From assembly GCA_965112735.1 (NCBI GenBank), contig OZ218952.1, positions 4,712,001 to 4,776,000 of the forward strand: DNA of 64,000 bases, given 5' to 3'. This DNA comes from Phaeosaccion multiseriatum. Taxonomy: Eukaryota; Protista; Ochrophyta, other classes. This document shows positions 17,074 to 61,111 of this stretch, piece by piece (position 1 is the stretch's first letter; each line of letters opens with the position of its first letter). A model generated the notes under the pieces. It saw only the letters and a program-made list of their open reading frames with translations. It did not search any database and was not told where the DNA came from. The position numbers were made by a program, and so were the translations under genes.

Positions 17074-17114
<41 letters not shown>

Positions 17115-30811: not shown

Positions 30812-32552
30812 TGACCTTCACTGGCGAGCGCACCGTAACCTCGATCGTGTGACCCCGCCCTGCTGGGACTGCCGTACGACCCGTGGCAGCCACCGCTTCG
30901 GCAATCTCAGCTCTCCGCACTGCTGTCTGCAAGGCGGCCACCCCCCCTGGAGCGTCCTCCATCCGCACACGGTAGAGAGCCAAGGCAGCGCGTTGCACAC
31001 ACCCCTCACACATAGCACACTCACTGTCAACAGCCGACGCACAGGCACAAGCTCCCGGACTGGGGGGCTCCTTGAGCAGAGCGACTCCCGCGCCAGGCTC
31101 CAAGGCTACTGCATGACAAGCACGCACAAACGGATCAAGGGCAAGCGTGTGCAGCCCCGCCTCCTCCGTCAACACAGCCGTGAAAGCAGCCTCCTGCTGA
31201 TGCTGCTGTGCTGCTGCTGTCGCACGAGCACGCTGCCTCCGCTGCTTCCTCCGTACCCGCCGTCGAAGAGCTACTGCGCGCCTCGCTGCATCCTGCTGCT
31301 CCTGTGCCGCCTGCTCGTCTCCCTTGCGCAGCGCTGCCTTCGCCTGCTGGGCACGCCGTCTCAACCACTTTGCTGCCACCCTCTGCTCAGTCCTGCTCCG
31401 CCCCTCCGCCGGAGGCACCGCTGGAGACGTCAGCGGCAGGGTCCGAAGGCTCTGCTCCTGCTGCTGAAGCTGAACCTCCTCCTGCTGCTGAAGCTGAACC
31501 TGCCACGCCCACTGTTCATGTTCCCCCGAGGGAGTGAATGGCGGAAGAGATGCTGCCCCGAGCGGCAAGGCCCGCACGAGGCCCATGGCCTTGGCCTGGC
31601 GAGGCGTCACCAGGGAGCACAGCTGCTGAGGCTGAAGCTCATCGCTTGACGGTGGGCTGGCTTTTGCAACCTGGACGGCAGCCTCGACAGCATGACCCTG
31701 CTGCTGCTCCAATTGCTCCTGCTGCCCCCCCGCCACCTGCGGCTGCTGCTCGGCAACCTGGACGACTGCCTCGACAGCAGGACCCTGCTGCGGCTCCAGT
31801 TGCACCTGCGGTCCCGCCGGCTGCTGCTGCTGTTGCCGCTCCTTCGCCGCACGCAGTGCGCGCTGTTCCGGGAAGGCACACGCACGCACCCGCTCCAAAC
31901 CCCTTGCATCCATCCAGACAGACTCGTGTTGCGCAACGGTTGCCGCCTCGCACTCAACCGCCCCCACTGCCGACGGTGGCACCTGCTGCTCCGGACACTC
32001 ACCCGCAACGACTGCATCCTCCTGGCGCAGAGGCAGCGGCAGCGCGACGTCAGGTCCGCTCGACGGCTCGACGGCAGAGCCGGGCTGCGGTGCTTCGACT
32101 AAGCACACGGAGCGTACCACTGGACACGGCTGCTGCTGCTGCTGCTGCTGCTGCTCCGGCGGCGGCAGCTGCTCGACTGCGGAAGCCGCTGGCGCAGCCT
32201 CCTGGTGCACGCCCTCCACGACTACCTCTAGCTCCTCCCCGACTACCTCTACTGCACGGCGCTGCTGCTGCGCCTGCTGCTGCGCCTGCTGCTGCGCCTG
32301 CTGCTGCACCGCCGTCACCTCCGTGGACGCCCTACCCACTACTGCATGCTCGGGACACCGATGCTGCGGCAGCTCTGCATGCTGCTGCTGCTGCTGCTGC
32401 TGCTGTTGCTGCTTGCGTCGCAGCTCAGCAAGTCTGTCGCCACACCACATGTCACTCCGATAAACTCTGATGGCAGGTGACTCCTGCTCTACACGACTAG
32501 CCTGACCGCTCCTACGCTGAGCGTCGGCATGGGGCAAAGGTGGGTCTGACAA
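30714..32552 (-). pseudogene. Pol N-terminal region of A (Gln-rich linker, Cys cluster), ending before the protease
   Basis: C-terminal part aligns with the C pre-protease region (CEGCVQRA, GRGHTIEVTVRS). Confidence 0.75.
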
Positions 32553-32693
32553 ACAAGATAGGTGCGAAGTACATTCATTATCTTCTACACTGCTCTAGCC
32601 CGCCCTCCCCCCCGGTTCCCCCACGCCGACGCTATCCTCACGCGCTGCGGTCGTGGTCCCCAGGGCTGCTGGCCAAGCAGCCCCGGGGCACCG

Positions 32694-32995
32694 TCAGCCT
32701 TCGAACTTGAACCCGTCCTGCGCCGCCAGAGTGCCCGCCACCATTGCTGCTACGGCTTCAGACATGTCGGACTCCTGGTGCAGCGCTCTGACCGCCTGCC
32801 GCCGCTGCACGCGACTCACAATGCCGAGCAGCTCCTCACGCGTAGCGGGAATGGCGTTGCATTCTATCCATCCATGGCCGGCGCGGCGACAAGTCATGCA
32901 GTTAAATGGGGCATTGCCGTTGCCACGCTGCTTGACCGAGCCGTGGAACAGCAAGGGCCGCTGCTGGGTGGGCGTGAGCCGCGGCTGCTGCGCCG

Positions 32996-33026
<31 letters not shown>

Positions 33027-34916
33027 CACTGCATTCACCCCCACCTCCTGTGACGGCTGATGGTCCAGATGCTGCTCCACCGAATTCACGGCCACTTCCA
33101 GATGCTGCTCCACCGCATTCACGGCCACTCCCCCGCGCGGAGTGCGCAGACCACCACCACCACCACCACGGGCCCGCGGAGCCCCACCAGTAGAAGAGAG
33201 CGTAAGTGGGCTACCAGCCTGGAGCACCCGAGTCGCGGAAGGAAATGCCTTCTGGAAGGCGGCGTAAAAGTCACTCCACGAGGGAGTCGCCGACTCCCAG
33301 CGCAGCCAGAAGTTGGTCATGCCGTCAGTTAATGGCAACGAGCCGTGACGAAGCCGAATCTCGACCTCTGGCCGCAGCACCGCCAGCAGGCCCGTAACCA
33401 AGGCTTGCTCATCCGTGGCCTGCCCCGTCACCTGCGCCAGACACAGAGAGAGTTCCGCCAGCTTGGTGAGCAGCCTGGCGAGCGCCTGGTTCACCTCGGC
33501 AGGAACGGTGGACGCTTCCAGAGGCTTGGCCTCCCGCACCAACGTCTGGACAAGCTGCTGGAGGCCGTCTCGTGCAACAGGAACGCCGAAGAGACGCAAC
33601 AGACACCTCGCGAGCAATTGGAACTGTGCACTCTCCGTCTCCCACTCCAATGTGACGTGCTGGTCGCCCTCCATCCACGACGCACCCTTCTGAGCCTCCG
33701 CCAGGACAGTGGCCCGATCCACTGCACCCAAGTCGGCCAGCACTCGCTGCTCCATCACCCGCCCTTGGCCCGGAAGCACGGACCCAGTAGAGGTCAAGAT
33801 CTCCTGTCCTTGCAGAATGCTCACCCAGGTGTACATGCGTGCGAGCACCACAGCACGAGGATGAGGCTGTCCAGCCGCATCGAATAGAGAGGGGAGTTTC
33901 TGCTCCTGGAGCACACGGATAGCACCCACGGGCAGCGTGATCGTCTGCACCGTATGACGGGCGGGCGCCTGCAGCACATCCAGGGCCTGCTGCCGTGCCC
34001 GCTCCCGCTCCCGTTCCATGTCCCGCTGTAGCATATCCTTAACCTGCTGCTGCAGCACCTCTACCCCCCCCGGTGCGGCATCCTTAACCTGCTGGAGCTG
34101 CGCCGCTAACAGCTCCCGCTGCAACGTCTCCACCTCCAACTGGGCAGCACCCTCAGGCGGCCGCTTCGGCTGCGGCTGCGCCGCCATCTGTCGCTGCAGC
34201 TCCACCGCAAACTCCCGCTGCTGCTCCGCCCCCCGCGAGAGCCGCAGCACCTCCAGTTCCCGCTGGAGGGCCGCCGTCTCCGCCTTGCTCTCCCGCAGTT
34301 GGGCCGCCATGAGCTGCGCAGCTTGGTGCTGCGTCAGCATCTCAAGCCCCTCCTGGAGAACCCGCGTGTCCTCCTGCTCCGGTGTCTTCTCTCCCGCCGC
34401 TGGCTGATCCACCACCCGAGCCCCGCCAGACGCACCAACAAGAGGGACCAAGGGCGTTCCAACCACATCCCACACCGTGCTCTCCTCCTGGCCCACCGAC
34501 TCTGCATCCCCCGAGTCCTCCTGGCCCACCGACTCTGCATCCCCCGAGTGGAAGGAAACCTCCGACTCCGCCACCGGCAGCGGCCTCACCCCAGCAGCAG
34601 GAGGGGAAGCGGCAGCAGCCGTAATCGCAGACCCCTCAAAAAAAGAGGGCGACTCCAGGGACTCCTCCCCCCTACGCAACGCCGCCCGCACACGGTCCAC
34701 AGCCCCAGGGCTGGCAGTGACCTCCACAGGAGGAGCAGCAGCTTCCGATACCACAGACCCCACGTCCGCAGCACCACCATCAGCTCCACCGCCCTCAGCG
34801 TCACTCGTAGCGCCCTCCGCCGATGAAAGACTCAGGAAGTCCATCCCCTCCTCAGCCCTGGCCACCCTAGCAGCGTGGAAACGCATGAAGTCCATCCCCG
34901 CCTCAGCCAGTGCCAC
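32694..34916 (-). CDS. gag: Gag of element A
   Basis: 740-aa ORF after the 5' LTR with CCHC knuckle CMTCRRAGHGWIEC. Confidence 0.88.
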
Positions 34917-36100
34917 CCTAGCAAGCCCAAAGCTGTCTACGGCCTAAAGCTGGGCAGCTGGAAGCAAAGCTCAAGCCAACACAATAAATCAGCCTCAAAG
35001 CTGGATCTCAGACCTGTGTCTTTCGGGTCTTCCGGGTTGTCGAAACTACCGACAGCTAGCCTCAAAGCCAAGCTAGAGCAGAGCAGAAGCTGAAGCAAGC
35101 ACCCGGAAGCCAGCCCACACGCAGGCTGCGCTTCCTTTCTTTATTACTGATTTACCGTCTAGTTGGCCCGTTTTCCGGCCGTTACACTATTGATTGGGTC
35201 CCCATAGGGACCCCAACTAGGCCACTTCTAACAATTATACGGGATGGAACCCGTTTGCAAGCCCTGCTGCTAGGCTCTCCTTATACCAAGATCACCGTTC
35301 TGACGTCCTCCTCCACTCAGAATCTACGTAATATAGGACACACCGACCATTGACTTATGGTCCTTCTCACTCTGAGGCCTTCCAACAGAAGCTGAGAGGC
35401 AGGCTGCGCGGGCAGGCTCTGATGTGCCTCAAGAACTGCGTCACTCGACTGCCACTACTGCTGAAGCAGCGACAGTGAAAGTCAGTTCTCTCCTGCAGTC
35501 TTGTACTACTGAAGAAGCTCTGCCAGCCCAGCTTGATTCGACAAGCGTCAATTTCGATATAGACAACTGGGACTCTTTCATGGATGAGGTATATCAACCA
35601 CTGTACACTAGCACTGAGGTCTTTCACATAGCCTCGGCCACATTCGACTCTCAAAGTCGGGTTGGAACTCAAACTAATGAACCCTTTTCCAGCTACGATG
35701 ATCCTCTACCCGAGGTGTCCGACTCTCCATGTCTTGAAGAAAATCTCATCAAGCAAAGTCTCATTCCCATCGTAGCGAAAGCTGCACTAAACGGCTTCAC
35801 TGACTCAGACGCGCTCTATGAGGTTCTCACCTCCCATCCTCAAGTGTGGCGAAGCAAAGTGCTCATGCACGATCCACCGGCCAAGGTAGATCCCATGGTC
35901 ATTCGACTCAAGGAGGGAGCGGAACCCATCTGTCAACTTCCCATCTATCAATCGGGAGCTCGGAGAGACTTCCTCAAAGACTTCACCGATCAACTGACAC
36001 AGTTCGGGTACCACTACGCGAACCCTCAAGCTGTGTGGGCCAGCCGTGCCTTCTGCATAGCCAAGCCGGGCAAACCAGGCCAATTTCGGCAAGTGGCCGA

Positions 36101-44861: not shown

Positions 44862-45294
44862 TGTTGGAAGGCCTCAGAGTGAGAAGGACCATAAGTCAAT
44901 GGTCGGTGTGTCCTATATTACGTAGATTCTGAGTGGAGGAGGACGTCAGAACGGTGATCTTGGTATAAGGAGAGCCTAGCAGCAGGGCTTGCAAACGGGT
45001 TCCATCCCGTATAATATATCAAGTGTTACCACTTGTCTAAGCGGCTTAGGTCGCTTTTACAACCCGTTTTGACACAATTGCTGGTGAGGATATCCGAAAA
45101 ACAAAGGAAGGAGAGGAAGGAAGGACAGGACCGGGAAGGCAGGAGGCACACAGGCCATCTAGGACCAGACTCGGAGGCGGTAGGCAGTACCAGCACACGG
45201 CCTACAGGGGACAGTGGCTGCCACAGCGGTGGGCAGAGGATAGGCAGCAGGCAGGGAGCGAACAGCAGAAGCGGCACAGCTGTGTGGAGGTGAC

Positions 45295-46989
45295 GTGAGG
45301 GGCGCTCGGTCGGCCACAGCGGCACCCATGGCGGATTCTCCCACCAGTGTGGTCCCGAGTGGTGTTCGGACTCGCGCCCAGCGCGCTGCCGCTGAGGAAA
45401 CACGTGCTGCAGGCGAGGCAACAGCGACGGTCACGCCCCCATCTACTCCTCGTACGTCAGGATTTCTCCAGCGTCTCTCTGGTGGTCTCACTGGGTTCCT
45501 CTCTCGGCAGTCGGTGGCCCTCTCGGCGGCTGACGAGGCGGAGGTGGACGCTCAGGCTGAGCGGGATGTGGACCGGGTTATACAGGCGGGCGATCTGCAT
45601 GCTGCGGCCCTCGAGGCTGATGCCGCGGCTGGAGCGGTGGAGGAGGAGGAGGAGGAGAATTCGGAGGAGGAGGAGGAGGAGGAGGAGGAGGCGGAGGCGG
45701 AGGAGGAGGAAGGGACGGCTTCGGCGGCAGCGGGGATGGCAGGGGGTACTGTGGGCGCTGTGGCAGACGGCAGGGCTGCGACTGCTGCAGCCCCGACGGT
45801 AGCGGAGGCAGCGGGCGGCATCGCTGTCGGTGACGGGTTGGGGGTGCAGCAGCGGTTGCTAGCGGCTCAGATGTTGGGGCTGCAGCAGCAGATGGCCAGT
45901 TTGCATCTCCAAGCCTTGCCGACCGGTGGCCCTGTGCTGGGGGGGGGGGTGCAGACGATTCGGAGCTTGCCCGCTAAACTCTCTCTCATGCCCACGCTCA
46001 CCTGGGGCATGACGCACCGGGCCACGTTGGAGGTCGTCTCCGAGTGGATGCAGCAGCTGGAGTCCTGGGGCTACATGCGGCACGGGGAGGTGAAGGAAGA
46101 GCAGTGGGTGGAGGTGCAGCGTCTCATGACTGAGGGTTTCTCGGTGATGGAGCGGAGTAAGCTCGATACAGCGGTGAGTGTGGAGATGTCTGCACCTGAC
46201 ACTCCGCCTTTCTACCACGCGGCCGTGAGGGCGCTATTCCGGTTCTTTCACACGGTCGAGCTGCCGAGCGCCGCGGTGGTACGGAGCCTGGTGACGTCCG
46301 AGTTGACGGGCTGCATGGAGTCCAATCTCAAGCTGGTGACGGGGGTGTATCAGGTTAACGGCCTCAGGGCCTTGTTGGCGCAGGTCGGCGGCGATGCTCT
46401 GGCCGCCATCGTGGATCAGGAGGGGATGGCGGTTCTGGAGGCTCAAGCCATGCATCGGCGCAGGGGCATCAGTCAGCAGTCGCTCACCAACGCCATCCTG
46501 CAGGAGGTGAACATGGCGATGGCACACAAGCACTCCTGGGCGGCCTTGGGGACTATGTTGGAGCGGAAGTGCCCCCAGGAGTTCGAGCAGGTGCGCATGG
46601 ATCACAGCCAGTTGTCGTGCGGGGGTGGCGGTCGTGGCGGTGGTGGTGGGGGCGGTGGGGGTGGCAGGCCTAGGAGGGAGAGCATGGACATCAACGCCGT
46701 GGATCTGCCGGCTTCTGCTGCCGCTACCACCTCCATGGCGGCATCGGGTGCCACCCCGCAGACTGTGGGGGCCGTGGTGCCGGCTCTGCACGCGCCGGCG
46801 GATCGCTGCTATGGGTGTGGTCAGACAGGGCACTTCCGTTTTGGGTGTAATGTGGTGCCCCCAACCCCGGGCCTGAAGCGCGCGTTGATGAAGCAATTGA
46901 AGCGGAAGCTGGCGGAGGACCCGGATTTCGACGCCATCTCCGAGATGGTTAGGGGCGTGCAGGCAGAGGCAGCGGGTGGTCTGTTGTGA
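45295..46989 (+). CDS. gag: Gag of C (likely ATG at 45328)
   Basis: 564-aa ORF with a CCHC knuckle. Confidence 0.9.
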   Translation: MRGARSATAAPMADSPTSVVPSGVRTRAQRAAAEETRAAGEATATVTPPSTPRTSGFLQRLSGGLTGFLSRQSVALSAADEAEVDAQAERDVDRVIQAGDLHAAALEADAAAGAVEEEEEENSEEEEEEEEEAEAEEEEGTASAAAGMAGGTVGAVADGRAATAAAPTVAEAAGGIAVGDGLGVQQRLLAAQMLGLQQQMASLHLQALPTGGPVLGGGVQTIRSLPAKLSLMPTLTWGMTHRATLEVVSEWMQQLESWGYMRHGEVKEEQWVEVQRLMTEGFSVMERSKLDTAVSVEMSAPDTPPFYHAAVRALFRFFHTVELPSAAVVRSLVTSELTGCMESNLKLVTGVYQVNGLRALLAQVGGDALAAIVDQEGMAVLEAQAMHRRRGISQQSLTNAILQEVNMAMAHKHSWAALGTMLERKCPQEFEQVRMDHSQLSCGGGGRGGGGGGGGGGRPRRESMDINAVDLPASAAATTSMAASGATPQTVGAVVPALHAPADRCYGCGQTGHFRFGCNVVPPTPGLKRALMKQLKRKLAEDPDFDAISEMVRGVQAEAAGGLL

Positions 46990-47025
46990 CGATGCCCCGC
47001 CGCTACAGAGTCGGTAGCAGCGGGG
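46987..47025 (+). promoter_or_regulatory. Putative UGA readthrough signal (TGA-CGA + 31-nt hairpin)
   Basis: Gag and pol are in the same frame with only this stop between them. Hairpin 46995-47025. Equivalent structure in A at 32658-32696. Confidence 0.72.
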
Positions 47026-49957
47026 ACCGGAGCCCTGGGGCGGGGGGGGGTGGTAACGGCAAGTAGTAGGGCAGTAGATACGGGAGTTAGAGAGGGTAAC
47101 AAATCACATAATGTAACACCTCATCGAGCTTGTGTATCGTCTTCCTTCAGCTTGCTAGCCACACTTCCTCCCTCCCCGAGGGGCGAGATTCACACAGTTG
47201 ACAGCGGTAGGCCCGTTGACAGCGGTAGGGGGTGGGTTGACGGTGATGGGGTGGAGCAGAAGGCGGAGAAGGCGAAGGAGGAGGAGGAGGAGGAGGCGGC
47301 GGTGTGGGGTGCGGTAGGGGGCATGCCGTTGTGGCGGCAGCGAGCTTGCCGTGAGCCACGCCTTCCGAACCATATGCTGCGCATAGGGCGGCAGAAGCAG
47401 CAAGCGCTCACTCTGCGCGCAACAGCTGACGCTGCACGGGCTCGGGCGGCCGCGTTCCTACGTTGTGCAGTGGGGCTCCCAGCCGCTGGGGGTGCAGTCG
47501 AGGGTGCGGCCGTTGGAGGGTTGGGGGCTGCCCCGCTCACGTTGGTGGCGGTGGAGGCGGAGGCAGCGGCGGAGGCGGTGGAGGTGGAGGAGGCGGAGGA
47601 GGAGGAGGAGGAGGAGGAGGAGGAGGAGGAGGAGGCGGAGGAGGCGGAGGAGGCAGCTGACGCAGTAACGGCAGCGGCACAGGAGGGGCCGGCGGAGGAG
47701 GAGGAGGAGGAGGAGGAGGAGGGGGAGGAGGAGGAGGAGGAGGCGGAGGAGGAGGATGAGGAGGAGGAGGAGGCGGAGGAGGCAGCTGACGCCGTAACGG
47801 CGGAGGCACAGGAGGGGCCGGCGGAGGAGGAGGAGGAGGAGGCGGAGGAGGAGGAAGAGGAGGCGGCGGCGGAGGCAGCTGCCGCAGTAACGGCGGCGGC
47901 ACAGGAGGGGCCGGCGGAGGCGCAGGCGGAGGAGCAACCGATGTCGGCGGCGCTGGAGGAGGCGGAGGAGGAGGGGGAGGAGGAGGAGAAGGAGGAGGAG
48001 GAGGAGGCGGAGGAGGCGGAGGCGGAGGCGGAGGCGGAGGAGGCAGCTGCCGCAGTGACGGCGGAGGCACCGGAGGGGCAGGAGGAGGCGCAGGCGGAGG
48101 AGAAACCAATGTCGGAGGGGCTGGAGGCGGAGGAAGAGGCGAAGGAGGCTAAGGAGGAGCCGACGGAGACGGTGGCGGACAACGGGAATGAGGCTCGACA
48201 GACTGGTGCAGCAGCCGATGCAGCAATAGCAGCAGCGCTCTTTGGGGCTGAGCTGCAGGCAGAGGTTGAGGCCGCTGCACAGGGGCCGGCATGCGGGCTG
48301 GTGGGGGCGACGGCGGAGGCACAGCGGCGGGTCTGGAGGGCCCGACAGGTGGTGGTCATTCGGCGGTGGCGTGAAGGGCATGTGTTCCGCTGCCCTGCGT
48401 CTGCGGCTGCTGGCGTGCCCCGGGGGGTCATGGCTCTGCCGCTCGGGGTCCCTCCATGGGAACAGTCTCTCCGTGACCCCAGCCTGCTTCGGGAGTGGGT
48501 GTGGGCGGCGCAGGAGTGGGTGATCAGCGACGCACAGACAGCTACGCAAGCTGCACAGCGCTGGGCGGCAGAGTGCGCGGCCGCTCACGTGCGGGTGCTG
48601 ACGTGGGCGGCCGAAACGTTTGTGATTCCGCCGGCTGGCCGTCGCGTACCTTCGGGGGTGGGGGTTGGGCCTTCAGCCGCGCCGGCAGGGAGTTCTGCTC
48701 TGCGGGTCGACGACTGCGATGATTTCGACGCGCTGCTCGCGGAGCACGTCACCCTGCTGCCGGAGTGTAGTGGTGCTCTTCCTGCATTGTCTCCGACGGC
48801 GAAGGCGTGTCGAGCAGCTGCGCTCCTGGCACCAGCTGCCGAATCGGTGGAGAGGGAGTGCGTCAGTGGGTGCTCTCTGAGTGCGGAGCGGGAGCCCTGT
48901 GAGGTGTGCGTGCAGCGAGCGAGGGTGGAGATGGCGGCGCTCTCAGTCACTGACGATACAGGGGCAGCGTATCTGCGGCGGGAGGCGAGGCGGAAGCAGA
49001 TTGAGATGACTCTGGCGATTAAGCAGACAGGGCGTACCGGGGTGTCGGTCAATCCGCGTGGGCATACGGTATCGGTGGTGCTTCAGTCTGCCCTTCAATT
49101 GCGCGAGCAGCTGCCACGGGCTCCGGTGTCGCTCACGGTGCAGGCCTTGGTGGACACCGGCGCCACTCACACGTGTGCCTCACGTGCGACCTTTGATCGT
49201 GGCGTCGCCGCAGGGGTCTTTCAGGTGCGCGATTTGGCGGAGGAGCGAGTGGCAGTTCGGTACGCCACGACTCAGGCCGCTACGTCAGCCTCGCTCGGTC
49301 GGGTGTGGGTGCAAATCGCCCTCACGCCTACGTGTCAGCCGGTGGTGGCCATGTGGGTAGTGGAGCACCTCGCCCGTCCCTTGATATTAGGCCAAGACGT
49401 GCTCACGATGGTGGGGGCGGTTACTGACCACAAGGTTCATCAGCTGTACGTGCATCCCACGGAGGCGAGTTCTCCGTCGTCGGAGCCGCGGTCGGAGGTT
49501 GACGATACCATCGCCGTGGCCGCTGTCAGCTTGGGGGAGTGTCAGGTGCTGGCGACTGAGGCACTTCGCCTCGCCCCGGGCGGCAAGGCCGTGCTCGTGC
49601 TGGAGGCGGACGGAGGTGTCGCAGGCGGGCGTCTCAGTGTGGAGTTGGGTGCCCACGGGCAGTTGCAGGCGCAGCAGGAGGCGTTGTGGTGGCTGAACCA
49701 CGAGCAAGTCCTGGTGAGTCGTGCGGCGTGCGTGGTCGGTGCCACGCAGCAGTGGAGCATCGGTATACACAATCAGCACAATGAGACGATCGTCGTGGTC
49801 CCTGGGCAGGCTGTGGGCGTGGGCACGTATCTGCTGGCGGAGGAGGATCGGCGAGCAGCGGTGGAGGTGGCGTTGTGTGAGCCGGCTCCTCTTGTTGCGC
49901 CTTGCACGCCGGCCGGGGGCCTTCGTCCGCTCCCGCGTCGCTGGGCACGCTGGGGTG
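46990..49957 (+). CDS. pol: Pol of C, 5' part (Glu-rich linker, Cys cluster, aspartic protease, beta-rich domain)
   Basis: ALVDTGATH and LILGQD protease motifs. Rejoins 51591 in frame after removing B1 and one TSD. Confidence 0.9.
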
Positions 49958-51586
49958 TGTTGGAAGGCCTCAGATGAGATGGGCCATAAGTCAATGGCCC
50001 AGGCCCAGGCAGATACAGTGAGAACGGGTGGCGTGGCTCTCACTATCCTATGTGCGAAGGTGGTCGTTTAGGACTAGCATGCAATAAGTTAATAGAGGCA
50101 AGGCTGGCTGCTAGGCTGGCTTTGGGGTTGCTGTTACCTTGTCCGTGTGTCTAGTTCTATCCTATCTGTAGGCGACAGCGCATGTCGGTCGTGCGTACGT
50201 CGTTTTACAACCCCAAAGGCCCGAAAGCAGCACTTAGCCAAGAGGCTTAGGCAGGGAAGGAAGAGGCGTGTTAGGGGAGCACCGTGCGGCACATAAGCAG
50301 TGCCGTACGACGTGCGACAGCAGCGGAGTTGTTGTTGCACGGAGAGGCGGGAGTGGAGAGAGAATTGCCGGGAGTGGTGTCTACAGCGGGCACAGCTTTC
50401 GAGTGTGGCAGCAGCACGGATGTTGTTGTTGCACGGAAATGGATGCTGAAGGTTGGTGGGCAGTGGAGAGAGAGAATTGCCGGGAGTGGTGTCTACAGCG
50501 GGCACAGCTTTCGAGTGTAGCAGCAGCACGGATGTTGTTGTTGCACGGAAATGGATGCTGGAGGTTGGTGGGCAGTGGAGAGAGAGAATTGCCGGGAGCG
50601 GTGTCTTACAGCGGGCACAGCTTTCGAGTGTGGCAGCAGCACGGATGTTGTTGTTGCACGGAAATGGATGCTGGAGGTTGGTGGGCAGTGGAGAGAGAGA
50701 ATTGCCGGGAGTGGTGTCTACAGCGGGCACGGCTTTCGAGTGTGGCAGCAGCGCGGCTGTTGCTGTTGCACGGAGCTTGGCGGGAGACAGAGAAGGATAC
50801 TCGCAAGGCTGCTTTAGGGACTGTCTGGGTGCCTTGTAGGCACACCAGTAAACACTTTAGCAGTCAGCATTAGTGGTGCGCAACGAGGCTTTGGCAACGC
50901 TGGTGGCGAGTAGGAGTGGAGAAAGATATGGCGCGGGTGAGTTTGAGTCGTGGGATGTTCTCATCCGTGAGCCTGTGTGGGTGAGTTTGAGTCGTGGGAC
51001 TTTCTCATCAATACAGGGGGTGTGTGTGGGAGGAGCGGTCGCACACATCTGGGTGAGTGTTGCATAATGCTCATCCGTTTTCTTTTTTTGGAAGCAGCAT
51101 GGTGTTAGAAGTCGTGCTTTTGCTAGACTGGTACCTCCCGGTCTGAATTCAGAGGGTAGGTACCAGTCTAGCAAAAGCACGACTTCTAACAATGGAGGCT
51201 TGTGCGACAGTCGAGCTTCAGTAGGCGAATCCGCTTGTGTTGCGTGGGTACACGCAACAGTCTTGTCAAGGGGATGTTGGAAGTGGCGGATAGCTATTGG
51301 GGATGTTGGAAGGCCCCGGGATAGGCATTGGGGATGTTGGAAGGCCTCAGATGAGATGGGCCATAAGTCAATGGCCCAGGCCCAGGCAGATACAGTGAGA
51401 ACGGGTGGCGTGGCTCTCACTATCCTATGTGCGAAGGTGGTCGTTTAGGACTAGCATGCGATAAGTTAATAGAGGCAAGGCTGGCTGCTAGGCTGGCTTT
51501 GGGGTTGCTGTTACCTTGTCCGTGTGTCTAGTTCTATCCTATCTGTAGGCGACAGCGCATGTCGGTCGTGCGTACGTCGTTTTACA
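49958..51586 (+). mobile_element. B1: 1.6-kb non-coding (TRIM-like) LTR element
   Basis: 252-bp LTRs at 49958-50209 and 51335-51586 (one visible mismatch). TSD GGTG. Internal ~115-bp tandem repeats. Confidence 0.95.
51103..51191. mobile_element. 89-bp palindromic mini-element (TGT..ACA)
   Basis: 34-bp perfect inverted arms, 4-bp TSD ATGG; absent from the B2/B3 homologous sites. Confidence 0.85.
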
Positions 51587-51590
51587 GGTG

Positions 51591-54500
51591 CGTCTCGTGC
51601 TGTGGTCGGTGGCGAGGAGCGTGGTGGTGGTGTCGGTGGCGGAAGTGCAGCAGCAGCCGGAGGAGGAGGAGGAGGAGATGGCGGAGGAGGCGGAGGAGGA
51701 GGCGGAGGAGGCGGAGGAGGAGTAGGAGGAGGCTCAGAAGGCGAAGGAGGAGGAGGAGGAGGAGGAGATGGCGGAGGCGGCGAAGGTGGAGGAGGAGGAG
51801 GCAACGACGGAGCGCCCCGACAGGCGTGGCTCGAGGCTGTGGCTTTGCGTGAGCGCTGGGGACGCGAGACAGTGGCCTCCGATCTGGTCGATGGGCCTGA
51901 GGATGTTTTCCGCCCTGTGCCGCTGGGGCCCGTGGCTCTGGGAGCCGTCCGTGCTCCGGTCGTGCAGGCAGTGCGGCCCGTGACGAGGGAGTCGGGCAAA
52001 CACAGGCCCTGCAGGCCTGCTCGGCTGGGGCTCGGTCGGCGTCTACGGGTGGCGCGGCGGCACGTCTCACTCTCAGTGGAGGGGCCTTTTACTGCTGGTC
52101 CTAGCATCTTGGCTCGCCACGCACGGGCTGTAGCGGCCGCAGCAGCAGCTGGCGGCGGCGGCGGAGGCGCAGCAGTCGCAGGAGGAGGCGAAGGAGGAGG
52201 AGGGGGAGGAGGAGGAGGAGGAGACGGAGGAGGAGGAGGAGGAGGAGGAGGAGGAGGAGGAGGAGGAGGAGGAGGAGGAGGAGGAGGAGGAGGAGGAGGA
52301 GGAGGAGGAGGAGGAGGAGGAGGAGGCGGAGGAGCAGCAGGAGGAGGCGCACCTTCCCTGTGCGTGTCTGAGGCCGGTGTGGCAGCGGTGGACGGGGGGC
52401 CCTCAATTGGCGACGCTGGGCCTGGAGGAGGAGGAGGCGATGGAGGAGGAGCCAGCGGAGACGCAGGAGGAGGCGGGGGAGGAGGAGGAGGAGGAGGAGG
52501 CGGAGGGGGAGGAGGAGGAGGAGGAGGAGGAGGAGGAGGAGGAGGAGGAGGAGGAGGAGGAGACGCAGGAGGAGGGGCACCTTCCCTGTGCGTGTCTGAG
52601 GTCGGTGTGGCAGCGGTGGAAGGGGGGCCCTCAATTGGCGACGCTGTGACTGGGGAGGTGGAGGTGGTGCCGACCACGGAGTCTCCCCAGGCCGCCCTGC
52701 ATGCATTGCAGGATGACGTGACGGCTGGGCAGCAGGTTGAGGCTACTCAGGGCTGTCTGCAGGGCCCGACCTGGACTATCGACGAGCATGGTGCCTTGAC
52801 GTTGGGCGGCACGGGTGAGGGACGGCAGGCGGGCACACGGGAGGCCGCTCACAGCTTGATCGTGCGTGAGTGGGCGCCTCGCCTCGCAGCGAGTGGGCAG
52901 GAGCGGCTCCGTACGTGTTTGGCGGCTGCGGAGGTGGGTGCAGTTACGGCTCTCCTGCTCCTCCGCCCACACGTGCAGCAGACGCAAGGGGGCCTGGAGG
53001 GTGTCGATGATGTGGTGGTGGCTCAGTGGTTGGAGCAACTCTTGTCCATGTGGAGCAGTCACTCGTTGCTGAAGCAGGCCGGTGTGGAGACGGAGCTGAA
53101 CGCAGCACTGCAGTTGTTTCTCACCATTCGGCGGCTACTGTGGCAGTGTCGTGCCCTGCGGGCGGAGGTGGGAGGGTTGGCAGGTGGTGAATGTGTGCAG
53201 CAGCAGAGGCGGCGGGCGCAAGCAGCAGTGGCACGGGCCAAATTCTACCAGGCGCAGCTGCCCCAGCACATGCACGCAATGACTATCGGTGATGAAGGTT
53301 GGACAGAAGCGCAGCGGTGGGGCTTGGTGGTGGTGTTGAAGCAGCGAGTAGCGGCCTTCTGCGTGGATGGGAGCGATTACGGCCGCACAGATTCGGGCCG
53401 GTTTGGGTTTCCGTTGCTGGACCCGAAGCAGCCGCCAATTCGGAGTGCGGCACGGCGCTACCCTCCTCCGGTCCGGCGCGGTATTGAGATTGAGTTGAAC
53501 AAGATGTTAGCAGCAGAGATCATCCGGCCCAGCACAGCAGCCTGGGCCACTCCACTCATGGCCGTGTTGAAGACGGACGAGCACGGCAACACCAAGTGCC
53601 ACGAGGACGGCACTCCGATCGTGCGGATGACGTGTGACCTGTCGCAGCTCAATGACGCGTGCCGCACGGAGGCGCCCGCCATGCCAGTGGTGGATGATTT
53701 GCTGGCGGAAATGCAGGGGTCTACGGTCTTTTCGGTGATGGACATCATGTCTGGCTACTTCAATGTGCCCATGGCCACCACGGAGGATGAGGACATCTCT
53801 ACATTTGTCTGCCACAGTGGCACGTACGCCTGGAGAGTCATGCCACAAGGAGCGAAGAATGCACCCGCCACGTTCGTACGCCTTATGAACACGGTGTTGC
53901 AGGGCCTACAGGCATTCGTGGCGTGCTTCGTGGACGACATTGCAGTTTTCTCCGCCACGGTGGATCAGCACATTGGCCAGTTAGACCAAGTTCTCGGCAG
54001 GATGGTGCAGCACAAGCTCAAGCTGGCGCCGAGCAAGGTGGTGTTGGGGGCATCTCAGGTGCGCTTCTGTGGGCATTTGGTGGATAGTGAGGGGGTGCGG
54101 GCCGATCCAGCCAAGTATGCAGCAGTTCGAGCGCTGGCCAAGCCCACTGCGCAGTCAGGCAATCAGGTGCGACAGGTCAGGCGCTTTGTAGGCATGCTCA
54201 GCTACTTCCGCAAATTCATTCCGGCGTTTGCCATGAAGGTGCGGCCGCTCAATGAGCTCTTGCGCAAAGGGGTGGATGTGCGGTCAGCGTGGGGGCCGAG
54301 GCACGACGCGGCGTGGGAGGGGCTCATCGAGGACCTGCTCCGCTCGCCCGCGTTGGCCTTCCCTCACTATGGCTCGGAATCGGTGTTCACGCTGAGCACC
54401 GACGCTTCAGCAGACGGGTTAGGGGGTGTGCTGTCGCAGCGGGATGCCGAGGGGGTGGAGCGAGTCGTGACGTTCATCAGTCGTGCCACTACCCCCACGG

Positions 54501-57500
54501 AGGCTCGGCTAGGCAGTACGGAGCTCGAGCTCTTGGCGGTGGTTTGGTGTGTGCGCAAGTTGAGCATGTACATTTGCCACCATCCCTGCACGGTGGTGAC
54601 GGACCACCAACCCTTGCTGTGGCTGGCGACGCACAAGGACACCAACTCCAAGCTCTTTCGGTGGTATGAACGGCTCTCTGCTCATCATCTCAAGTTTGTC
54701 CACAAACCGGGGCGGGAGCTTGTGGTGCCTGACTGCTTGTCACGCGACCCCTTGCCAGTGACTGAGTGGTGTGATGCGGTGGGAGTGGAGGTGGCGTTGG
54801 TGGATGTGGTGGGTGACACCCTCGCGTTAGGGTGGGAGGATCCGGTGGAAGGTGCGGTGCTGCGGTTTGCTGCCGCGGCGCAGCAGTTGCAAGGGGAGGC
54901 GGTGGCGGCTCAGTCAGTGCCTATGGAGGGACTCTCGTCGGTCACGGCGAGACAGCAGGCGTCGGCAGGTTTGGAGGCGCTGTGCGTGGACAGTGTGGCG
55001 GTCGCGGCGCCAGGCGGCTTCGGGTCGGCTCGGTTGCAGCACGTGGAGCAGATGCGGCAATGTGGCTGGGCTCCAGTGACCCTGTCCCACATCAACGAGA
55101 AGAAACGGGTGATAGAGGAGTGGTCTCAGCTGCCGCTGTTTCTCAGCCACGTGCCAGCAGCGCGGTGCACGTACATACGCACGGAGGAGCAGGTGTGGGA
55201 CATGCGAGCGGCACTGCGGGAGGCGACAGTGGTGGCCATGGACTCGGAGTGGGCTATACGCACTCCTCCTCGGCCGGCGTCTCTGCTGCAATTGGGTGTT
55301 CAGTATAGCGGCGTCGCCAATTCGGAGCGTGATTGTGGGTTCTGGGTGGATTTGGACAGTTTGAGTGGCAATGGTGGTATGGAGGCGCTGGCGGCGGTGC
55401 TGAGTGAGCTGTGGGGCGACGGGGGGATTATGAAGCTGGCGCATCACTGGAGTCACGACCAGCGTGCCCTAGGGAAGTGGCCGGCGTTGGCGCCGCATGT
55501 GTGGACCATCGCCAACTTGGTCGACACGACGCATCTATTCAAGGAGGTGTGGCCTGAGCACTGCCGTCCCATTGGCTTAGCAGACCTGGTTAGTATGTTC
55601 CTGCAGCGTTTTATGAGCAAGGAGGAGCAGATGACGGATTGGACTCAGCGGGAGCTCACTGCGGCCCAGCTCAGCTATGCCTTCGACGATGTGGCCGCAT
55701 TACTACAGTTGCTGCCGAAGATGCGGGCTTGTGCAGTTCCGGTGCCGTCTGCGATGGAAGTGAGCGCGGTGGATAGCGGAGTGGCGGGTGTGACGCGTGC
55801 TGAGATGCGCGCAGGACAGTTCGTCTCTGCCGGGGTGGGGTATTGGGCCGATCGGGAGCACGCCAGTCCACTCTTCATTTTCTCAGCGACCGCTAAGTCA
55901 GTGGAGATGATCGACCTGATCCTTCTTTCTTACCGACATCCCCAGTGGACCTGGACGGAGCTCATGGACGCAGTGGAGCCGTTCAGGGCGCGCTATCGGC
56001 CGGTCGCGGCGCGGAGGCGTGGCAAGCTGTCACTACCTCGAGCGGTTATGATTGAGAAGACGTGGAGTGCCATCGCCGCAGATACGGGCGGCTACTACAC
56101 CATGGTGACCCCCACAGAGGCCCAGCAGCAGTGGCAAACCCAAGGTGTGGCGTGGGACATCCCTGCCGCCGTCGAGGCCGCGGGCGTGGTGGGTGCATCG
56201 ACGGTGGAGGCGGAGCGCACACCGACCGCGGCCCCAGCAGACGCCACAGCCGGCGGCGGTGACGGTGCGGGTGGTGCAGGCGGCGGAGGAGGGGTTGAAG
56301 GCGGCGGCAGCGGCGGAGGCGGAGGTGGAGGAGGAGGAGGAGGCGGAGGAGGAGGAGGAGGAGGCGGCGGACTCACAGTTGGCCGCTCGGCCACGGGGGT
56401 GGAGGGACGAGAGGCTGGAGCGACTCCAGCGGCTGACACCGATGCCCATGCGGCTGCGGCGAGCGAGGCAGCAGCGCTGGCAGACGTGGAGGCCGCAAGG
56501 CAGGCTGCTACGCGGCAATTTGGGTGGTCCCTCCCTGGTGTTCCCCCGGCAGTGGGTGAGCAGTCGTGCGCAGCCCGCATATTGCATGGGGCTCGGACTT
56601 ACCAGCCCGCGTGGTGGGTGAAGGCGCAGCAGCAGGACGCTGAGTTGGAGGGGTGGCGTCAGAAGGTCTTGGCAGCCTCCCCGGGCGAGGGGGTGTTCGA
56701 TGCGGGCGGGGGGGAGTTCTCTCTCGATGGCGATGGCGTCCTTCGCCGCAAGTGGGCCCCCGGGGGGCGACGGTGGCGGGTAGAGCGAACGAGGTTGCAG
56801 CTCTGCGTCCCCAAGGCGCTCAGGCCGGCCCTACTGCATGCCACGCACGGCGATGCGGTCTCAGGCGGCCATCACGGGCCAGGGCGGATGCTGGATGCGC
56901 TGCAGGAGCGAGTGTGGTGGCCCTCCATGAACGGGCATGCGCTGTACTGGGCCCGTTCATGTCTTGCGTGCCAGACACGCAAGACACCACGGAGGCGACC
57001 TCCACAGGTTCCGCTCTCGTCCATATCATCGGCGGCTGTGAATGGGCCATGGGCGGTTATGGGTGCTGACGTGGCAGGACCTTTCCCCATGGCCATGGGG
57101 GGGGAGGAGTACATTTTGGTGTTTCAAGATTGGTTCACCAAATGGACAGTGGTGGTGCCATTGTGCGCCAAGGACTATACAGCGGAGGGCATTGCTCGGG
57201 CATTCGTGCGGCACGTAGTGACGGTGCTGGGGGCGCCCAAGGTGCTGGTCAGTGACCAAGGGTCGCAGTTCACGAGCACGCTCATGGCCGATGTGCTGCG
57301 CGTACTCCAGACATCACAAGTCTTCACTACGCCGATGCATCAGCAAGCCAATGGGCAAGTGGAGCGCTTCATGGCCACGATGAAGGACATGCTGGCGACG
57401 ACAGTGGAGGCCCAGATGCAGCAGTGGCCTGAGTATGTTCCCGCGCTCACGTACGCGTACAACTGCAGAGCTCACAAGACCACAGGCCTCTCCCCGTACT

Positions 57501-58471
57501 ACACTCTCTTCGGTCGACACCCCCCGATTCCACTTCAATCGATGCTGCCTGCCCTCGAGGAGGACGGCTCGTTCGAAACGCCTTCGGCATGGGTGCACGA
57601 GCTGAGGGCGCGGATGGCAGCGGCGGCGCAGGTGGTGACGGGCAGGCGCGAGGAGTATCGCAGCAGGCTACAGCTCAAGAACCGTGAGCGTCGCTGGCCA
57701 GCGCCGATGCCTCCTGGCACTAAGGTGTGGTTGTACCGTCCAGGGGGGGCGGCGCAGGAGGAGGGTGAGGCCATGGAGGAGCAGAAGGCACTGACGCTCA
57801 AGGCGCTGAGTCATGCTTGGGACGGACCGTTCCAAGTCCTGGCTTGGCCCACACAGCAGGCCTTCCAGGCGCGACATGGTGGCATACTCAACGACGAGCA
57901 CTACGCGGTGATGCGCCGTAGCACGGTGTATCTGGATGTGCCGAGGGTCAGAGGCGGGGGAGTGGAGTTCAAGCAAGGGGCGTACCATAGGGACCTCACC
58001 AAGCCGTTCGTTGATGGGGTGAGTGGCCAGCCGCAAGGACTACCAGATGGGTTCGCTCGATACCACATCCGGTACTGCTCAGCCCACTGGGGTACTAGTG
58101 CACTGCAGGAGAAGCGTAGCGTGACCGATGACGAGGTTGGGATAGGGCGGGCGCCCGAGCTGGCGCGGATAGTGAAGCTGAGGTGGCGTAAGGCCACAGG
58201 GCAGCCCCTACGGCGTGAGTACTGTGTACGTTGGGCTGTACGGGAGGGTGGCAGTTATCAGACGTGGGAGTGGGACGATTGGCTCTTGCGGCGCGGAGAG
58301 AGGGCGGCAATAGAGGCATTCGAGGACTCTTTGGCGCCAGGGGCGTTGGACCCGAGCGTGCAGCGCAAGCGTGGGCAGCGGTCTAAACGAGAGCGCACCG
58401 TGCGCGCCATGTTGCACGAGAAGTGGGGGATGGGCATCGCTGCGGAGACGGCGCAACATTTGGGGTTCTAG
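51591..58471 (+). CDS. pol: Pol of C, 3' part (Gly-rich linker, RT, RNase H, DEDDy 3'-5' exonuclease, integrase, chromodomain)
   Basis: MDIMSGYF, MPQG, FVDD; TDAS, ELELLA, TDHQPL; DSEW..HD..YAFDD; HHCC/DDE; EYCVRW..QTWE. Confidence 0.95.
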
Positions 58472-59268
58472 ACCTTGCGGTGGTGGTGGTCGCAGAGACG
58501 GGATAGGCATTGGGGATGTTGGAAGGTTACGGGATAGGCATTGGGGATGTTGGAAGGCCTCAGAGTGAGAAGGACCATAAGTCAATGGTCGGTGTGTCCT
58601 ATATTACGTAGATTCTGAGTGGAGGAGGACGTCAGAACGGTGATCTTGGTATAAGGAGAGCCTAGCAGCAGGGCTTGCAAACGGGTTCCATCCCGTATAA
58701 TATATCAAGTGTTACCACTTGTCTAAGCGGCTTAGGTCGCTTTTACAATGCACGACGATGTTCCTGCACTTCTTAAGGACTTTCTTTCTTCTTTCCAACG
58801 TCGCACACTGGCGGAGGACGCTAAACGCTTCCTTCGGTCTCGTGGCATCTCGACTCGACGTCGACCACGGACAGGCCGCCGATAAAGCTCCCTCACTGGG
58901 AACCCTTTTTTCGGTTTCTCTTACTCTTCGTACATGTACCCTTTTACTTTACTTCTAGATAATGGACGCTCATATTAGATGAGATTTCTCTTTCGAGGGG
59001 AAGTGTTGCCCTTGCATGCCTGTGCATCGATATAACGATCACAATATAGCATGCTATAGGCATATAGGCTCAAATGCCTCCACCCCTGGGGACCTGATAC
59101 TTGAATGGTATCTGGATCGCCCTCTCACTCTTCTAGATAAGCACCTTAACCTAAAGGAGACACAGGCCTCTGATTTGGACTGTGGCAAGGCCTCCAACTA
59201 TTCCAGCACTTGCATCTCTTATTGGTTAGGTTGTTAGTTGCTTGCTAGCAATAGCGAGACTGGTTACA

Positions 59269-60859: not shown

Positions 60860-61111
60860 TGTAAAACGACGTACGCACGACCGACATGCGCTGTCGCCTA
60901 CAGATCGGATAGAACTAGACACACGGACAAAGTAACAGCAACCCCAAAGCCAGCCTAGCAGCCAGCCTTGCCTCTATTAACTTATCGCATGCTAGTCCTA
61001 AACGACCACCTTCGCACATAGGATAGTGAGAGCCACGCCACCCGTTCTCACTGTATCTGCCTGGGCCTGGGCCATTGACTTATGGCCCATCTCATGTGAG
61101 GCCTTCCAACA
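60860..61111 (-). mobile_element. B1-type LTR in inverted orientation abutting the satellite
   Basis: 252 bp, near-identical reverse complement of 51335-51586. Confidence 0.93.

What the first reader, a model, noticed from the sequence alone, without database searches (positions are those of the whole stretch)
46987..47025. Conserved UGA-CGR plus covarying 31-nt hairpin at the gag-pol junction (stop-codon readthrough)
Seen: in C, gag and pol share one frame with a single TGA: TGA CGA TG CCCCGC-C-GCTAC[AGAGTCG]GTAGC-A-GCGGGG ACC. In the diverged element A (minus strand, 32696-32655): TGA CGG TG CCCCGGGGCTGCT[TGGCC]AGCAGCCCTGGGG ACC. Spacer (5 nt), hairpin length (31 nt) and flanks are conserved while the stem sequence changes compensatorily. 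Known: UGA-C contexts (CGG/CUA) with a 3' stem-loop stimulate readthrough in alphaviruses and others, whereas Gypsy elements usually use frameshifting or a single ORF. Caveat: A has an extra in-frame TAG 33 codons downstream (32595-32597), probably decay.
Basis: partly seen in the sequence, partly recalled or inferred. Interest (0 to 1): 0.76.

Follow-up and report, generated by a model that had tools for sequence, protein, structure and literature searches.

The report
Stop-codon readthrough signal in algal retrotransposons
Two related jumping genes of this alga separate their coat gene (gag) from their enzyme gene (pol) by one UGA stop followed by a strong RNA hairpin, most likely so that ribosomes sometimes read through the stop, a trick already known from retroviruses, RNA viruses and some yeast retrotransposons.

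Summary
Two Ty3/Gypsy families, C (window 46987-47025, +) and A (32696-32658, -), have gag and pol in one frame. A single TGA separates them, followed by CGR-UG and a 31-nt GC-rich hairpin. All 7 C copies and all 15 A copies in the genome keep the stop, spacer and stem exactly, and both window copies have identical LTRs, so the TGA belongs to active elements and is not decay.

A diverged A subfamily shows no change from -3 to +52, while third codon positions in gag just upstream differ by about 40%. This points to selection on the RNA.

- Only 2 stem pairs covary cleanly, and C has a C.A mismatch.
- The 'ACC' flank is private to the window copy of C.
- C's pol in the window is split by a nested 1.63-kb insertion.
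- A's extra TAG and a 5.4-kb deletion are private to the window copy.

Programmed UGA readthrough is the best reading (about 0.65). I could not test it, and no RNA data or relatives outside this genome were found. In-frame-stop gag-pol and UGA-CGG plus a 3' stem are both already known, so this is a new member of a known kind. Its spacer is unusually short (5 nt or less). First-stage notes of this scan flag the A signal on other pieces of this genome.

The parts
44862..45062 (+). Element C 5' LTR (minimum extent)
   Evidence: 201-nt direct repeat, 100% identical to 58548-58748.
45328..46986 (+). Element C gag, counted from the first ATG. It carries a CX2CX4HX4C zinc knuckle about 50 codons before the stop.
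   Evidence: ORF 45295-46989. Translation shows CYGCGQTGHFRFGC. No Pfam match.
46987..46989 (+). Element C in-frame TGA between gag and pol
   Evidence: Present in 7 of 7 C copies.
46990..46994 (+). Spacer CGAUG. The C at the +4 position gives the UGA-C context.
   Evidence: Identical in all C copies. CGGUG in A.
46995..47025 (+). Element C 31-nt hairpin: arms 46995-47006 and 47014-47025, loop 47007-47013, one C.A mismatch
   Evidence: Fold -19.6 kcal/mol, z = -4.6. It is in the minimum-energy fold when folding starts at the UGA. It is displaced when upstream sequence is included.
47086..47150 (+). Second, AT-rich conserved island 3' of the stop. Role unknown. Ends in a pyrimidine tract followed by CAG.
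   Evidence: Partly conserved between A and C. The A counterpart is invariant between A and A'.
46990..49957 (+). Element C pol, first part, in the gag frame. Contains Glu-rich repeats and the aspartic protease (DTGA, about 49135-49407).
   Evidence: Pfam gag-asp_proteas E = 0.0011.
49958..51586 (+). Nested insertion private to the window copy. It is a small LTR-like element with 253-nt terminal repeats and a 4-bp target duplication, and it splits pol.
   Evidence: In copies L064, L067, L068 and L065, window position 49957 joins directly to 51587. Repeat D14.
51587..58471 (+). Element C pol, second part: RT, RNase H, 3'-5' exonuclease domain, integrase
   Evidence: Pfam RVT_1, RT_RNaseH, DNA_pol_A_exo1, Integrase_H2C2 and rve. 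It is in the same frame as the first part once the 1633-bp insertion is discounted.
58548..58748 (+). Element C 3' LTR
32697..34916 (-). Element A gag, with zinc knuckle CMTCRRAGHGWIEC
32694..32696 (-). Element A in-frame TGA
   Evidence: Present in 15 of 15 A copies.
32689..32693 (-). Element A spacer CGGUG
32658..32688 (-). Element A 31-nt hairpin: 13 bp including one G.U, 5-nt loop
   Evidence: Fold -27.5 kcal/mol, z = -3.7. It is kept in the 146-nt fold.
32536..32596 (-). Element A second conserved island (+100 to +160). It contains the window copy's private TAG at 32595-32597.
   Evidence: No differences between A and A' across this stretch (alignment; counts). 7 of the 10 A copies read have AAG at the TAG position; the other two differ through an insertion or a frameshift.
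28107..35233 (-). Whole element A copy in the window. LTRs at 28107-28302 and 35038-35233 are 100% identical. It has a private internal deletion of about 5.4 kb near 30765.

Best explanation
A and C are two related, recently active Ty3/Gypsy-type LTR retrotransposon families of a GC-rich alga. Gag ends at a UGA, and pol (PR-RT-RH-Exo-IN) follows in the same frame.

Most ribosomes terminate at the UGA and make Gag. A minority decode the UGA with a near-cognate tRNA and continue, making a Gag-Pol fusion. This sets the excess of Gag over Pol that these elements need.

Two features make the UGA leaky. One is the C immediately 3' of it (UGA-CGR). The other is a stable GC-clamped hairpin that begins 5 nt or less after the stop. 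With the UGA in the A site, the hairpin sits in or at the mRNA entry channel and would slow or disturb termination.

Shown here:
- the anatomy of the junction;
- a single frame from gag into pol;
- the TGA and stem in every copy;
- nucleotide-level purifying selection on the site.

Inferred:
- that the bypass is translational readthrough;
- that the hairpin stimulates it.
For: 1. gag and pol share a frame with one TGA between them. In copy L064 gag (874-2544) is followed in frame by a 2032-aa ORF through PR, RT and RNase H. In A, at least 513 codons stay open after the TGA in 5 copies.
2. All 22 copies keep the TGA, spacer and stem. The only changes are one loop base in one A copy and the base just 3' of the stem in C.
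3. Both window copies have identical LTRs, so TGA-bearing elements transposed recently.
4. A versus the diverged subfamily A' (L005). Just upstream in gag, differences number 27 and 16 per 100 nt and are biased to third codon positions ([5,5,17] and [3,3,10]). That bias means both lineages evolved as coding elements. From -3 to +52 there are no differences. About 12 would be expected at those rates, by my arithmetic.
5. A and C have gag proteins only about 30% identical, and only over the last 69 residues. They still share TGACGRTGCCCC, the 31-nt hairpin length and the spacer. RNAalifold recovers the hairpin with 2 compensatory pairs. Only 1-3% of random-substitution simulations keep the stem.
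6. UGA-CGG with a 3' stem, and conservation over 100-200 nt 3' of the stop, is the documented readthrough signature in alphaviruses and virgaviruses (PMC3159437). In-frame-stop gag-pol is documented in Ty3/Gypsy elements.
7. TGA is not a sense codon here. It occurs once in about 3,850 in-frame codons, exactly at the gag/pol boundary.
Against: - No expression or protein data exist for this site.
- There are only two independent lineages, or three counting A'. Just 2 of 4 double changes in the stem restore a pair.
- The spacer is 5 nt, or effectively 1-4 nt if the extra base pairs at the foot of the stem form. [quoted passage not shown]
- With upstream sequence included, C's hairpin is not in the minimum-energy fold.
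- In Candida Tca2, a UGA plus a predicted pseudoknot did not direct readthrough in a reporter, and the junction held a promoter instead (PMC2194720).
- No relatives outside this genome were found to test the structure further.
Confidence: 0.65

Rival explanations
1. Pol is made from an alternatively spliced mRNA in which a short intron containing the TGA is removed. Gag and Pol are then fused by splicing, and the conserved zone holds splice signals.
For: Both families have a pyrimidine tract followed by CAG about 150-165 nt after the TGA (C 47140-47150, A 32556-32546), inside the second conserved island. In C, GT dinucleotides at -1 and -4 would give in-frame introns of 165 or 168 nt (my reading).
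Against: A has no GT in the last 30 nt of gag that gives an in-frame join to its CAG: the candidates give 161 and 167 nt (my reading). No donor is therefore conserved. The candidate donors in C are poor matches to the usual GTRAGT consensus. Splicing does not explain the invariant hairpin. None of the 22 copies lacks the interval, although a reverse-transcribed spliced RNA would occasionally leave such a copy.
Confidence: 0.1
2. Pol is expressed separately from Gag, from an internal promoter, subgenomic RNA or internal initiation in the junction zone, as the junction promoter of Candida Tca2 suggested. The conserved 200 nt are then a promoter or entry site, and the hairpin is not a recoding signal.
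For: The Tca2 precedent (PMC2194720). The conserved zone extends to about +160-200 and includes an AT-rich island of unknown role. In-frame AUGs lie 113 codons (C) and 82 codons (A) downstream of the TGA.
Against: Separate expression gives no reason for pol to be in the gag frame, or for the frame to be open right from the TGA, in both families. By my estimate the chance is about 1/3 for the frame times about 0.1 for 80-110 stop-free codons at this base composition, per family. The strongest conservation sits exactly on the UGA, spacer and hairpin. Even for Tca2, the authors concluded that Pol comes from the gag-UGA-pol RNA.
Confidence: 0.1
3. The hairpin is conserved for another cis function of the genomic RNA or cDNA, such as packaging, dimerisation or a protein binding site, or for the peptide it encodes. 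The stop is then bypassed by some other means.
For: The whole -100 to +200 zone is the most conserved part of the 3 kb compared between A and A'. The spacer is shorter than in verified readthrough stimulators.
Against: The register relative to the stop (5 nt) and the hairpin length (31 nt) are kept between A and C while the stem sequence changes. That fits a ribosome-positioned element. C's loop is not palindromic, so a shared kissing-loop role is unlikely (my reading). The encoded peptides differ (RCPGAAWPAALG against RCPAATESVAAG).
Confidence: 0.1
4. The UGA is decoded as selenocysteine, with the adjacent hairpin acting like the Sec redefinition element next to some eukaryotic Sec codons.
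For: From my own knowledge, a hairpin about 6 nt after the UGA resembles the element described beside the SEPN1 Sec codon. I did not check that paper here.
Against: No SECIS or any other Rfam family matches anywhere in the 64-kb window at gathering score. Only one sub-threshold snoRNA hit lies near the junction. No retrotransposon selenoprotein is known to me.
Confidence: 0.02
5. The TGA is a decay mutation in dead copies and the hairpin is a chance palindrome.
For: Individual copies do carry private stops, insertions and deletions.
Against: 22 of 22 copies in two families share the TGA at the same place. The LTRs are identical. The site is the most conserved stretch between subfamilies.
Confidence: 0.01

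Closest known systems
UGA-CGG / UGA-CUA readthrough sites with a 3' stem in alphaviruses and in plant tobra-, peclu-, furo- and pomoviruses (Firth et al. 2011, PMC3159437)
   Same: UGA followed by CGG (A) or CGA (C). A stem of 12 or more bp lies 3' of the stop. Conservation at synonymous sites is enhanced over 100-200 nt after the stop. The downstream ORF encodes the polymerase.
   Different: Those stems start 7-9 nt after the stop and enclose a long loop of about 100 nt. Here a compact 31-nt hairpin starts 5 nt or less after the stop. The host element is a DNA-integrating LTR retrotransposon of an alga. The A at position -1 that is conserved in the plant viruses is absent.
Gammaretrovirus (MuLV) gag-pol readthrough
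   Same: gag and pol are in one frame separated by a single stop. A 3' RNA structure is present. The purpose is a low Gag-Pol to Gag ratio.
   Different: MuLV uses UAG, an 8-nt purine-rich spacer and an H-type pseudoknot. Here the stop is UGA, the spacer is 5 nt, and there is a plain hairpin with no loop-to-downstream pairing of 5 nt or more.
Ty3/Gypsy elements Tj1, Tosmo1-3 and Tcry1 of fission yeasts (bioRxiv 10.1101/2022.12.06.519325)
   Same: Ty3/Gypsy elements with an in-frame TGA between gag and pol. The TGA is followed by C. The stop context is conserved across diverged families.
   Different: Their conserved motif is GAA-TGA-CT, and no 3' structure is described in the passages I read. 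Here the motif is TGA-CGR-TG plus a hairpin, and the codon before the stop is not conserved (TTG in C, GGC in A).
Candida albicans Tca2 (Ty1/copia) gag-UGA-pol junction (PMC2194720)
   Same: UGA between in-frame gag and pol, with a predicted 3' structure.
   Different: In reporters the Tca2 junction did not direct readthrough and contained a promoter. It stands as a warning that this anatomy alone does not prove readthrough.

Membership tests
Programmed stop-codon readthrough site of the UGA-C plus 3' stem type | A single in-frame stop separates an upstream ORF from a long downstream ORF in the same frame | tested here: met
Programmed stop-codon readthrough site of the UGA-C plus 3' stem type | UGA followed by C (CGG or CUA in known cases) | tested here: met
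   UGA-CGG in A and UGA-CGA in C. Invariant in 22 copies.
Programmed stop-codon readthrough site of the UGA-C plus 3' stem type | A stable 3' stem supported by compensatory changes | tested here: met
   Stems of 12-13 bp, z = -3.7 to -4.6. 2 compensatory pairs and 1 G-C/G-U change; 95.8% of cells paired against 31-54% when the partner is slid. The support comes from only two lineages.
Programmed stop-codon readthrough site of the UGA-C plus 3' stem type | The stem begins 7-9 nt after the stop | tested here: not met
   The spacer is 5 nt, or 1-4 nt if the extra base pairs at the foot form, against 7-9 nt in PMC3159437.
Programmed stop-codon readthrough site of the UGA-C plus 3' stem type | Enhanced conservation at synonymous sites 3' of the stop | tested here: met
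   A versus A': no differences from -3 to +52 and none from +100 to +160, against about 40% at third codon positions upstream.
Programmed stop-codon readthrough site of the UGA-C plus 3' stem type | Measured readthrough product that depends on the signal | not testable with these tools
   Needs a reporter assay or detection of the protein.
MuLV-type readthrough signal | UAG stop, 8-nt spacer and H-type pseudoknot | tested here: not met
   UGA and a 5-nt spacer. No loop-to-downstream complementarity of 5 nt or more within about 130 nt. No Rfam family match.
Ty3/Gypsy LTR retrotransposon | LTRs, gag with a CCHC knuckle, and pol in the order PR-RT-RNase H-IN | tested here: met
   LTR pairs. Knuckles read in the translations. 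Pfam domains in this order.
Fission-yeast Tj1/Tosmo-type in-frame stop | Conserved 8-nt motif GAA-TGA-CT | tested here: not met
   TTG-TGA-CG in C and GGC-TGA-CG in A, compared.
Selenocysteine recoding | A SECIS element in the 3' part of the transcript | tested here: not met
   No Rfam match at gathering score in the whole window. A divergent SECIS could be missed.

The most novel reading that the evidence does not exclude
The signal may be a bipartite recoding module specific to this alga. It would consist of a GC-clamped hairpin set unusually close to the UGA (5 nt or less) plus an invariant AT-rich island about 100-160 nt downstream. Unrelated retroelement orders in the same genome may share it: earlier notes of this scan report a UGA plus hairpin in a DIRS-order element. 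That would imply a host-specific way of stimulating readthrough that differs mechanically from the stimulators with an 8-nt spacer.
Probability: 0.12. Interest if true: 0.6.

Novelty: new member of a known kind. Interest (0 to 1): 0.36.

Why it matters
It gives a clean, testable candidate for programmed UGA readthrough in a little-studied algal lineage. It shows that a UGA-CGR plus 3' stem arrangement like that of RNA viruses also occurs in LTR retrotransposons. It also matters for annotation: gag and pol of these elements should be annotated as one recoded gene, not as a broken one. The very short spacer, if functional, would widen the known geometry of readthrough stimulators. The underlying principle is already established, so the general significance is modest.

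Tried and rejected
- Word-based protein search with C gag found nothing. The query's low-complexity runs probably swamped the candidate list.
- The same search with C pol (PR-RT-RH part) gave only 29-30% identical Gypsy proteins from Closterium, Klebsormidium and unnamed ENA records. No close relatives were available for cross-species covariation.
- The exact motif pattern found nothing in IMG/VR. In metagenome contigs it found 66 matches, roughly what I estimated chance would give. Only one is a full hairpin, and it lies between short ORFs, so it is not a retroelement.
- Exact look-up of the C Gag protein in public assemblies found nothing.
- Weak gag matches in the own genome (L054-L063) were low-complexity noise or one degenerate A fragment.
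- The covariance model R1 of the junction found only the 22 known copies in the genome. Only 150 of about 17,000 candidates were scored, so this search was not exhaustive.
- An H-type pseudoknot was rejected.
- Rfam gave no SECIS and no other family.
- The long-range structure that RNAalifold predicted downstream of the hairpin rests on an unreliable A/C alignment, and I do not rely on it.
Full-length A copies were therefore not read.
- The large HMMER search of representative proteins was not run, because the word search had already shown no relatives above 30% identity.
Full report
**What is there**

The window holds several Ty3/Gypsy-type LTR retrotransposons in a GC-rich genome of 67 Mb in 22 contigs. 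Earlier notes of the scan call the organism an alga.

Element C lies between LTRs at 44862-45062 and 58548-58748, which are 100% identical.
- Its gag ORF (45295-46989, first ATG at 45328) ends about 50 codons after a CX2CX4HX4C zinc knuckle.
- The gag stop is TGA at 46987-46989, and the same frame stays open afterwards.
- Pfam finds an aspartic protease in that continuation.
- In the ORF 51524-58471 Pfam finds RT, RNase H, a 3'-5' exonuclease domain and integrase.

Element A lies on the minus strand between LTRs at 28107-28302 and 35038-35233, also 100% identical.
- It has the same layout: gag 34916-32697 with a knuckle, TGA at 32696-32694, then an open frame.

**The reported signal**

- C: TGA, CGATG, then a 31-nt hairpin at 46995-47025. 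It has 12 stacked positions with one C.A mismatch and a 7-nt loop, and folds at -19.6 kcal/mol with z = -4.6.
- A: TGA, CGGTG, then a 31-nt hairpin at 32688-32658. It has 13 bp with one G.U and a 5-nt loop, and folds at -27.5 kcal/mol with z = -3.7.

Hairpins of this size (at least 12 bp, one mismatch allowed) occur only about 0.7-1.7 times per kb in the regions sampled.

When folding starts at the UGA, as it would with a ribosome covering the upstream RNA, the hairpin is in the minimum-energy fold of C. With upstream sequence included, C's hairpin is displaced, while A's is kept.

**Corrections to the anatomy**

- *C's pol in the window copy.* The window copy of C carries a nested insertion at 49958-51586 plus a 4-bp duplication. 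It is a small LTR-like element with 253-nt terminal repeats. In four other copies, position 49957 joins directly to 51587. The insertion adds 1633 bp, which explains why the protease ORF and the RT ORF are in different frames in the window. In copy L064, gag (874-2544) is followed in the same frame by a 2032-aa ORF through PR, RT and RNase H. The family plan is therefore gag-TGA-pol in one frame.
- *A's extra TAG.* The TAG at 32597-32595 is private to the window copy. Seven of the ten A copies read have AAG there; the other two differ at that point through an insertion or a frameshift. Five copies are open for at least 513 codons after the TGA.
- *A's deletion.* The window copy of A also has a private deletion of about 5.4 kb near 30765. 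Other copies carry 5.3-5.4 kb at that point.
- *The 'ACC' flank.* The 'ACC' after C's hairpin is private to the window copy. Five copies have CCC, which adds a base pair at the foot of the stem, and one has GCC.

**Is the TGA ancestral or decay?**

Pattern, BLAST and covariance-model searches of the whole assembly find 15 A copies and 7 C copies that span the junction.
- All 22 keep the TGA, spacer and both stem arms without change.
- The only variants are one loop base in one A copy and the base just 3' of C's stem.

With identical LTRs in both window copies, this shows that elements carrying the in-frame TGA were the ones that transposed. TGA is not a sense codon here: it occurs once in about 3,850 in-frame codons, at the gag/pol boundary.

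**Selection on the RNA**

Locus L005 is a diverged A subfamily, A', 87% identical over the junction.
- In the 200 nt of gag before the stop, A and A' differ at 27 and 16 sites per 100 nt.
- These differences are biased to third codon positions ([5,5,17] and [3,3,10]), so both lineages evolved under protein-coding selection.
- From -3 to +52 there is no difference at all, and again none from +100 to +160.
- The G-rich linker between these two stretches has several differences, and beyond +400 the sequences are barely alignable.

At the upstream rates, about 12 differences would be expected in the first 56-nt stretch (my arithmetic). Among ten A copies, the 42-nt motif is the least variable 42-nt window. 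This is the same kind of evidence used to find viral readthrough structures, namely conservation at synonymous sites 3' of the stop (PMC3159437).

**A versus C**

Their integrases are 72% identical. Their Gag proteins are alignable only over the last 69 residues, at 30% identity, and the DNA flanking the junction is near random identity. They nevertheless share TGACGRTGCCCC, the spacer length and the hairpin length.

In register, 9 stem positions differ.
- Two pairs are cleanly compensated (G-C to C-G, and G-C to A-U).
- One pair changes between G-U and G-C.
- Two double changes leave C unpaired: the C.A mismatch and the loop-closing pair.

Starting from A's hairpin, 9 random stem substitutions keep at least 11 pairs in only 1-3% of simulations. 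Hitting both partners in at least 4 pairs happens in 0.4-2.6%. The structure is therefore supported, but by two lineages only, and less strongly than 'changes compensatorily' suggests.

**Mechanism**

The best reading is programmed UGA readthrough. The UGA-C context is the leakiest known, and a stable stem lies just 3' of the stop. gag and pol are in one frame, and Pol is needed in lower amount than Gag.

The main mismatch with known cases is geometry.
- Verified stems start 7-9 nt after the stop.
- Here the spacer is 5 nt, or less if the extra foot pairs form.
- The lowest three or more C-G pairs would therefore have to be inside the mRNA channel, or unwound, when the UGA is in the A site. 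That part is inference.

No H-type pseudoknot is apparent, and no Rfam family, including SECIS, matches.

**Rivals**

- *Splicing across the TGA.* Both families have a pyrimidine tract plus CAG about 150-165 nt downstream. C has in-frame GT donors at -1 and -4. A has no in-frame GT donor in the last 30 nt of gag, and no copy lacks the interval. I give this about 0.1.
- *Separate expression of pol.* The precedent is Tca2, where a junction with UGA and a predicted pseudoknot gave no readthrough in reporters and held a promoter. This rival does not explain the shared frame or the frame being open right from the stop. I give it about 0.1.
- *Another cis role for the hairpin.* About 0.1.
- *Selenocysteine or decay.* Negligible.

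**Comparison with what is known, and novelty**

- In-frame-stop gag-pol is established in gammaretroviruses and in several LTR retrotransposons. These include the Ty3/Gypsy elements Tj1, Tosmo1-3 and Tcry1, whose conserved motif (GAA-TGA-CT) differs from the one here.
- UGA-CGG plus a 3' stem is established in alphaviruses and plant viruses.
- The present case combines the two in an algal Gypsy clade and has an unusually short spacer. I class it as a new member of a known kind.
- No relatives outside this genome were found, so cross-species covariation could not be tested.
- First-stage notes of this scan flag the A-family signal on other pieces of the same genome. One followed-up note reports a UGA plus hairpin in a DIRS-order element. 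I did not test those.

Copies were only compared and described.

Noticed in passing
window 47086-47150 (+) and 32596-32536 (-): A second conserved, AT-rich island lies about 100-160 nt after the UGA. It is invariant between A and A' and partly shared with C. It is rich in off-frame stop triplets and ends in a pyrimidine tract plus CAG. It could be part of the recoding signal, a splice acceptor or branch site, or something else.
   Followed up: partly
window 49958-51586; also 59269-60861 and minus strand about 10780-12020: A small LTR-like element of about 1.6 kb with 253-nt terminal direct repeats, internal tandem repeats of 112-115 nt each forming strong hairpins, and a 4-bp target duplication. 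One copy is nested inside C's pol. Another is nested, in the opposite orientation, in copy L066.
   Followed up: partly
window 55169-55727 (+): C's pol carries a DNA_pol_A_exo1 3'-5' exonuclease domain between RNase H and integrase (Pfam E = 4e-15). This was already reported by another finding on this window (s1-331321).
   Followed up: no
window about 30765 (-): The window copy of A has a private internal deletion of about 5.4 kb that removes PR to the pre-integrase region. Other A copies carry 5.3-5.4 kb there.
   Followed up: yes
window 36101-42017 (+): Element B, with 248-nt LTRs, is a chromodomain Gypsy with gag-pol as a single 1755-aa ORF. Its integrase is only 25% identical to A's. The same genome therefore hosts both the single-ORF and the in-frame-stop strategy.
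   Followed up: partly
window 47500-48600 (+): Long Glu/Ala-rich 9-15-nt repeats lie between the hairpin and the protease of C. They vary in length between copies, and their indels account for the frame and length differences among copies.
   Followed up: no
window 61110-63873 (+): A satellite with a 176-nt unit, at least 15 tandem copies at 91-96% identity, running to the window end.
   Followed up: no
window about 16000-26000: About 10 kb of extreme simple sequence. One part has GC skew 1.0 at 50% GC and another has 80% GC with AT skew -1. It produces artefactual ORFs of more than 3,500 aa.
   Followed up: no
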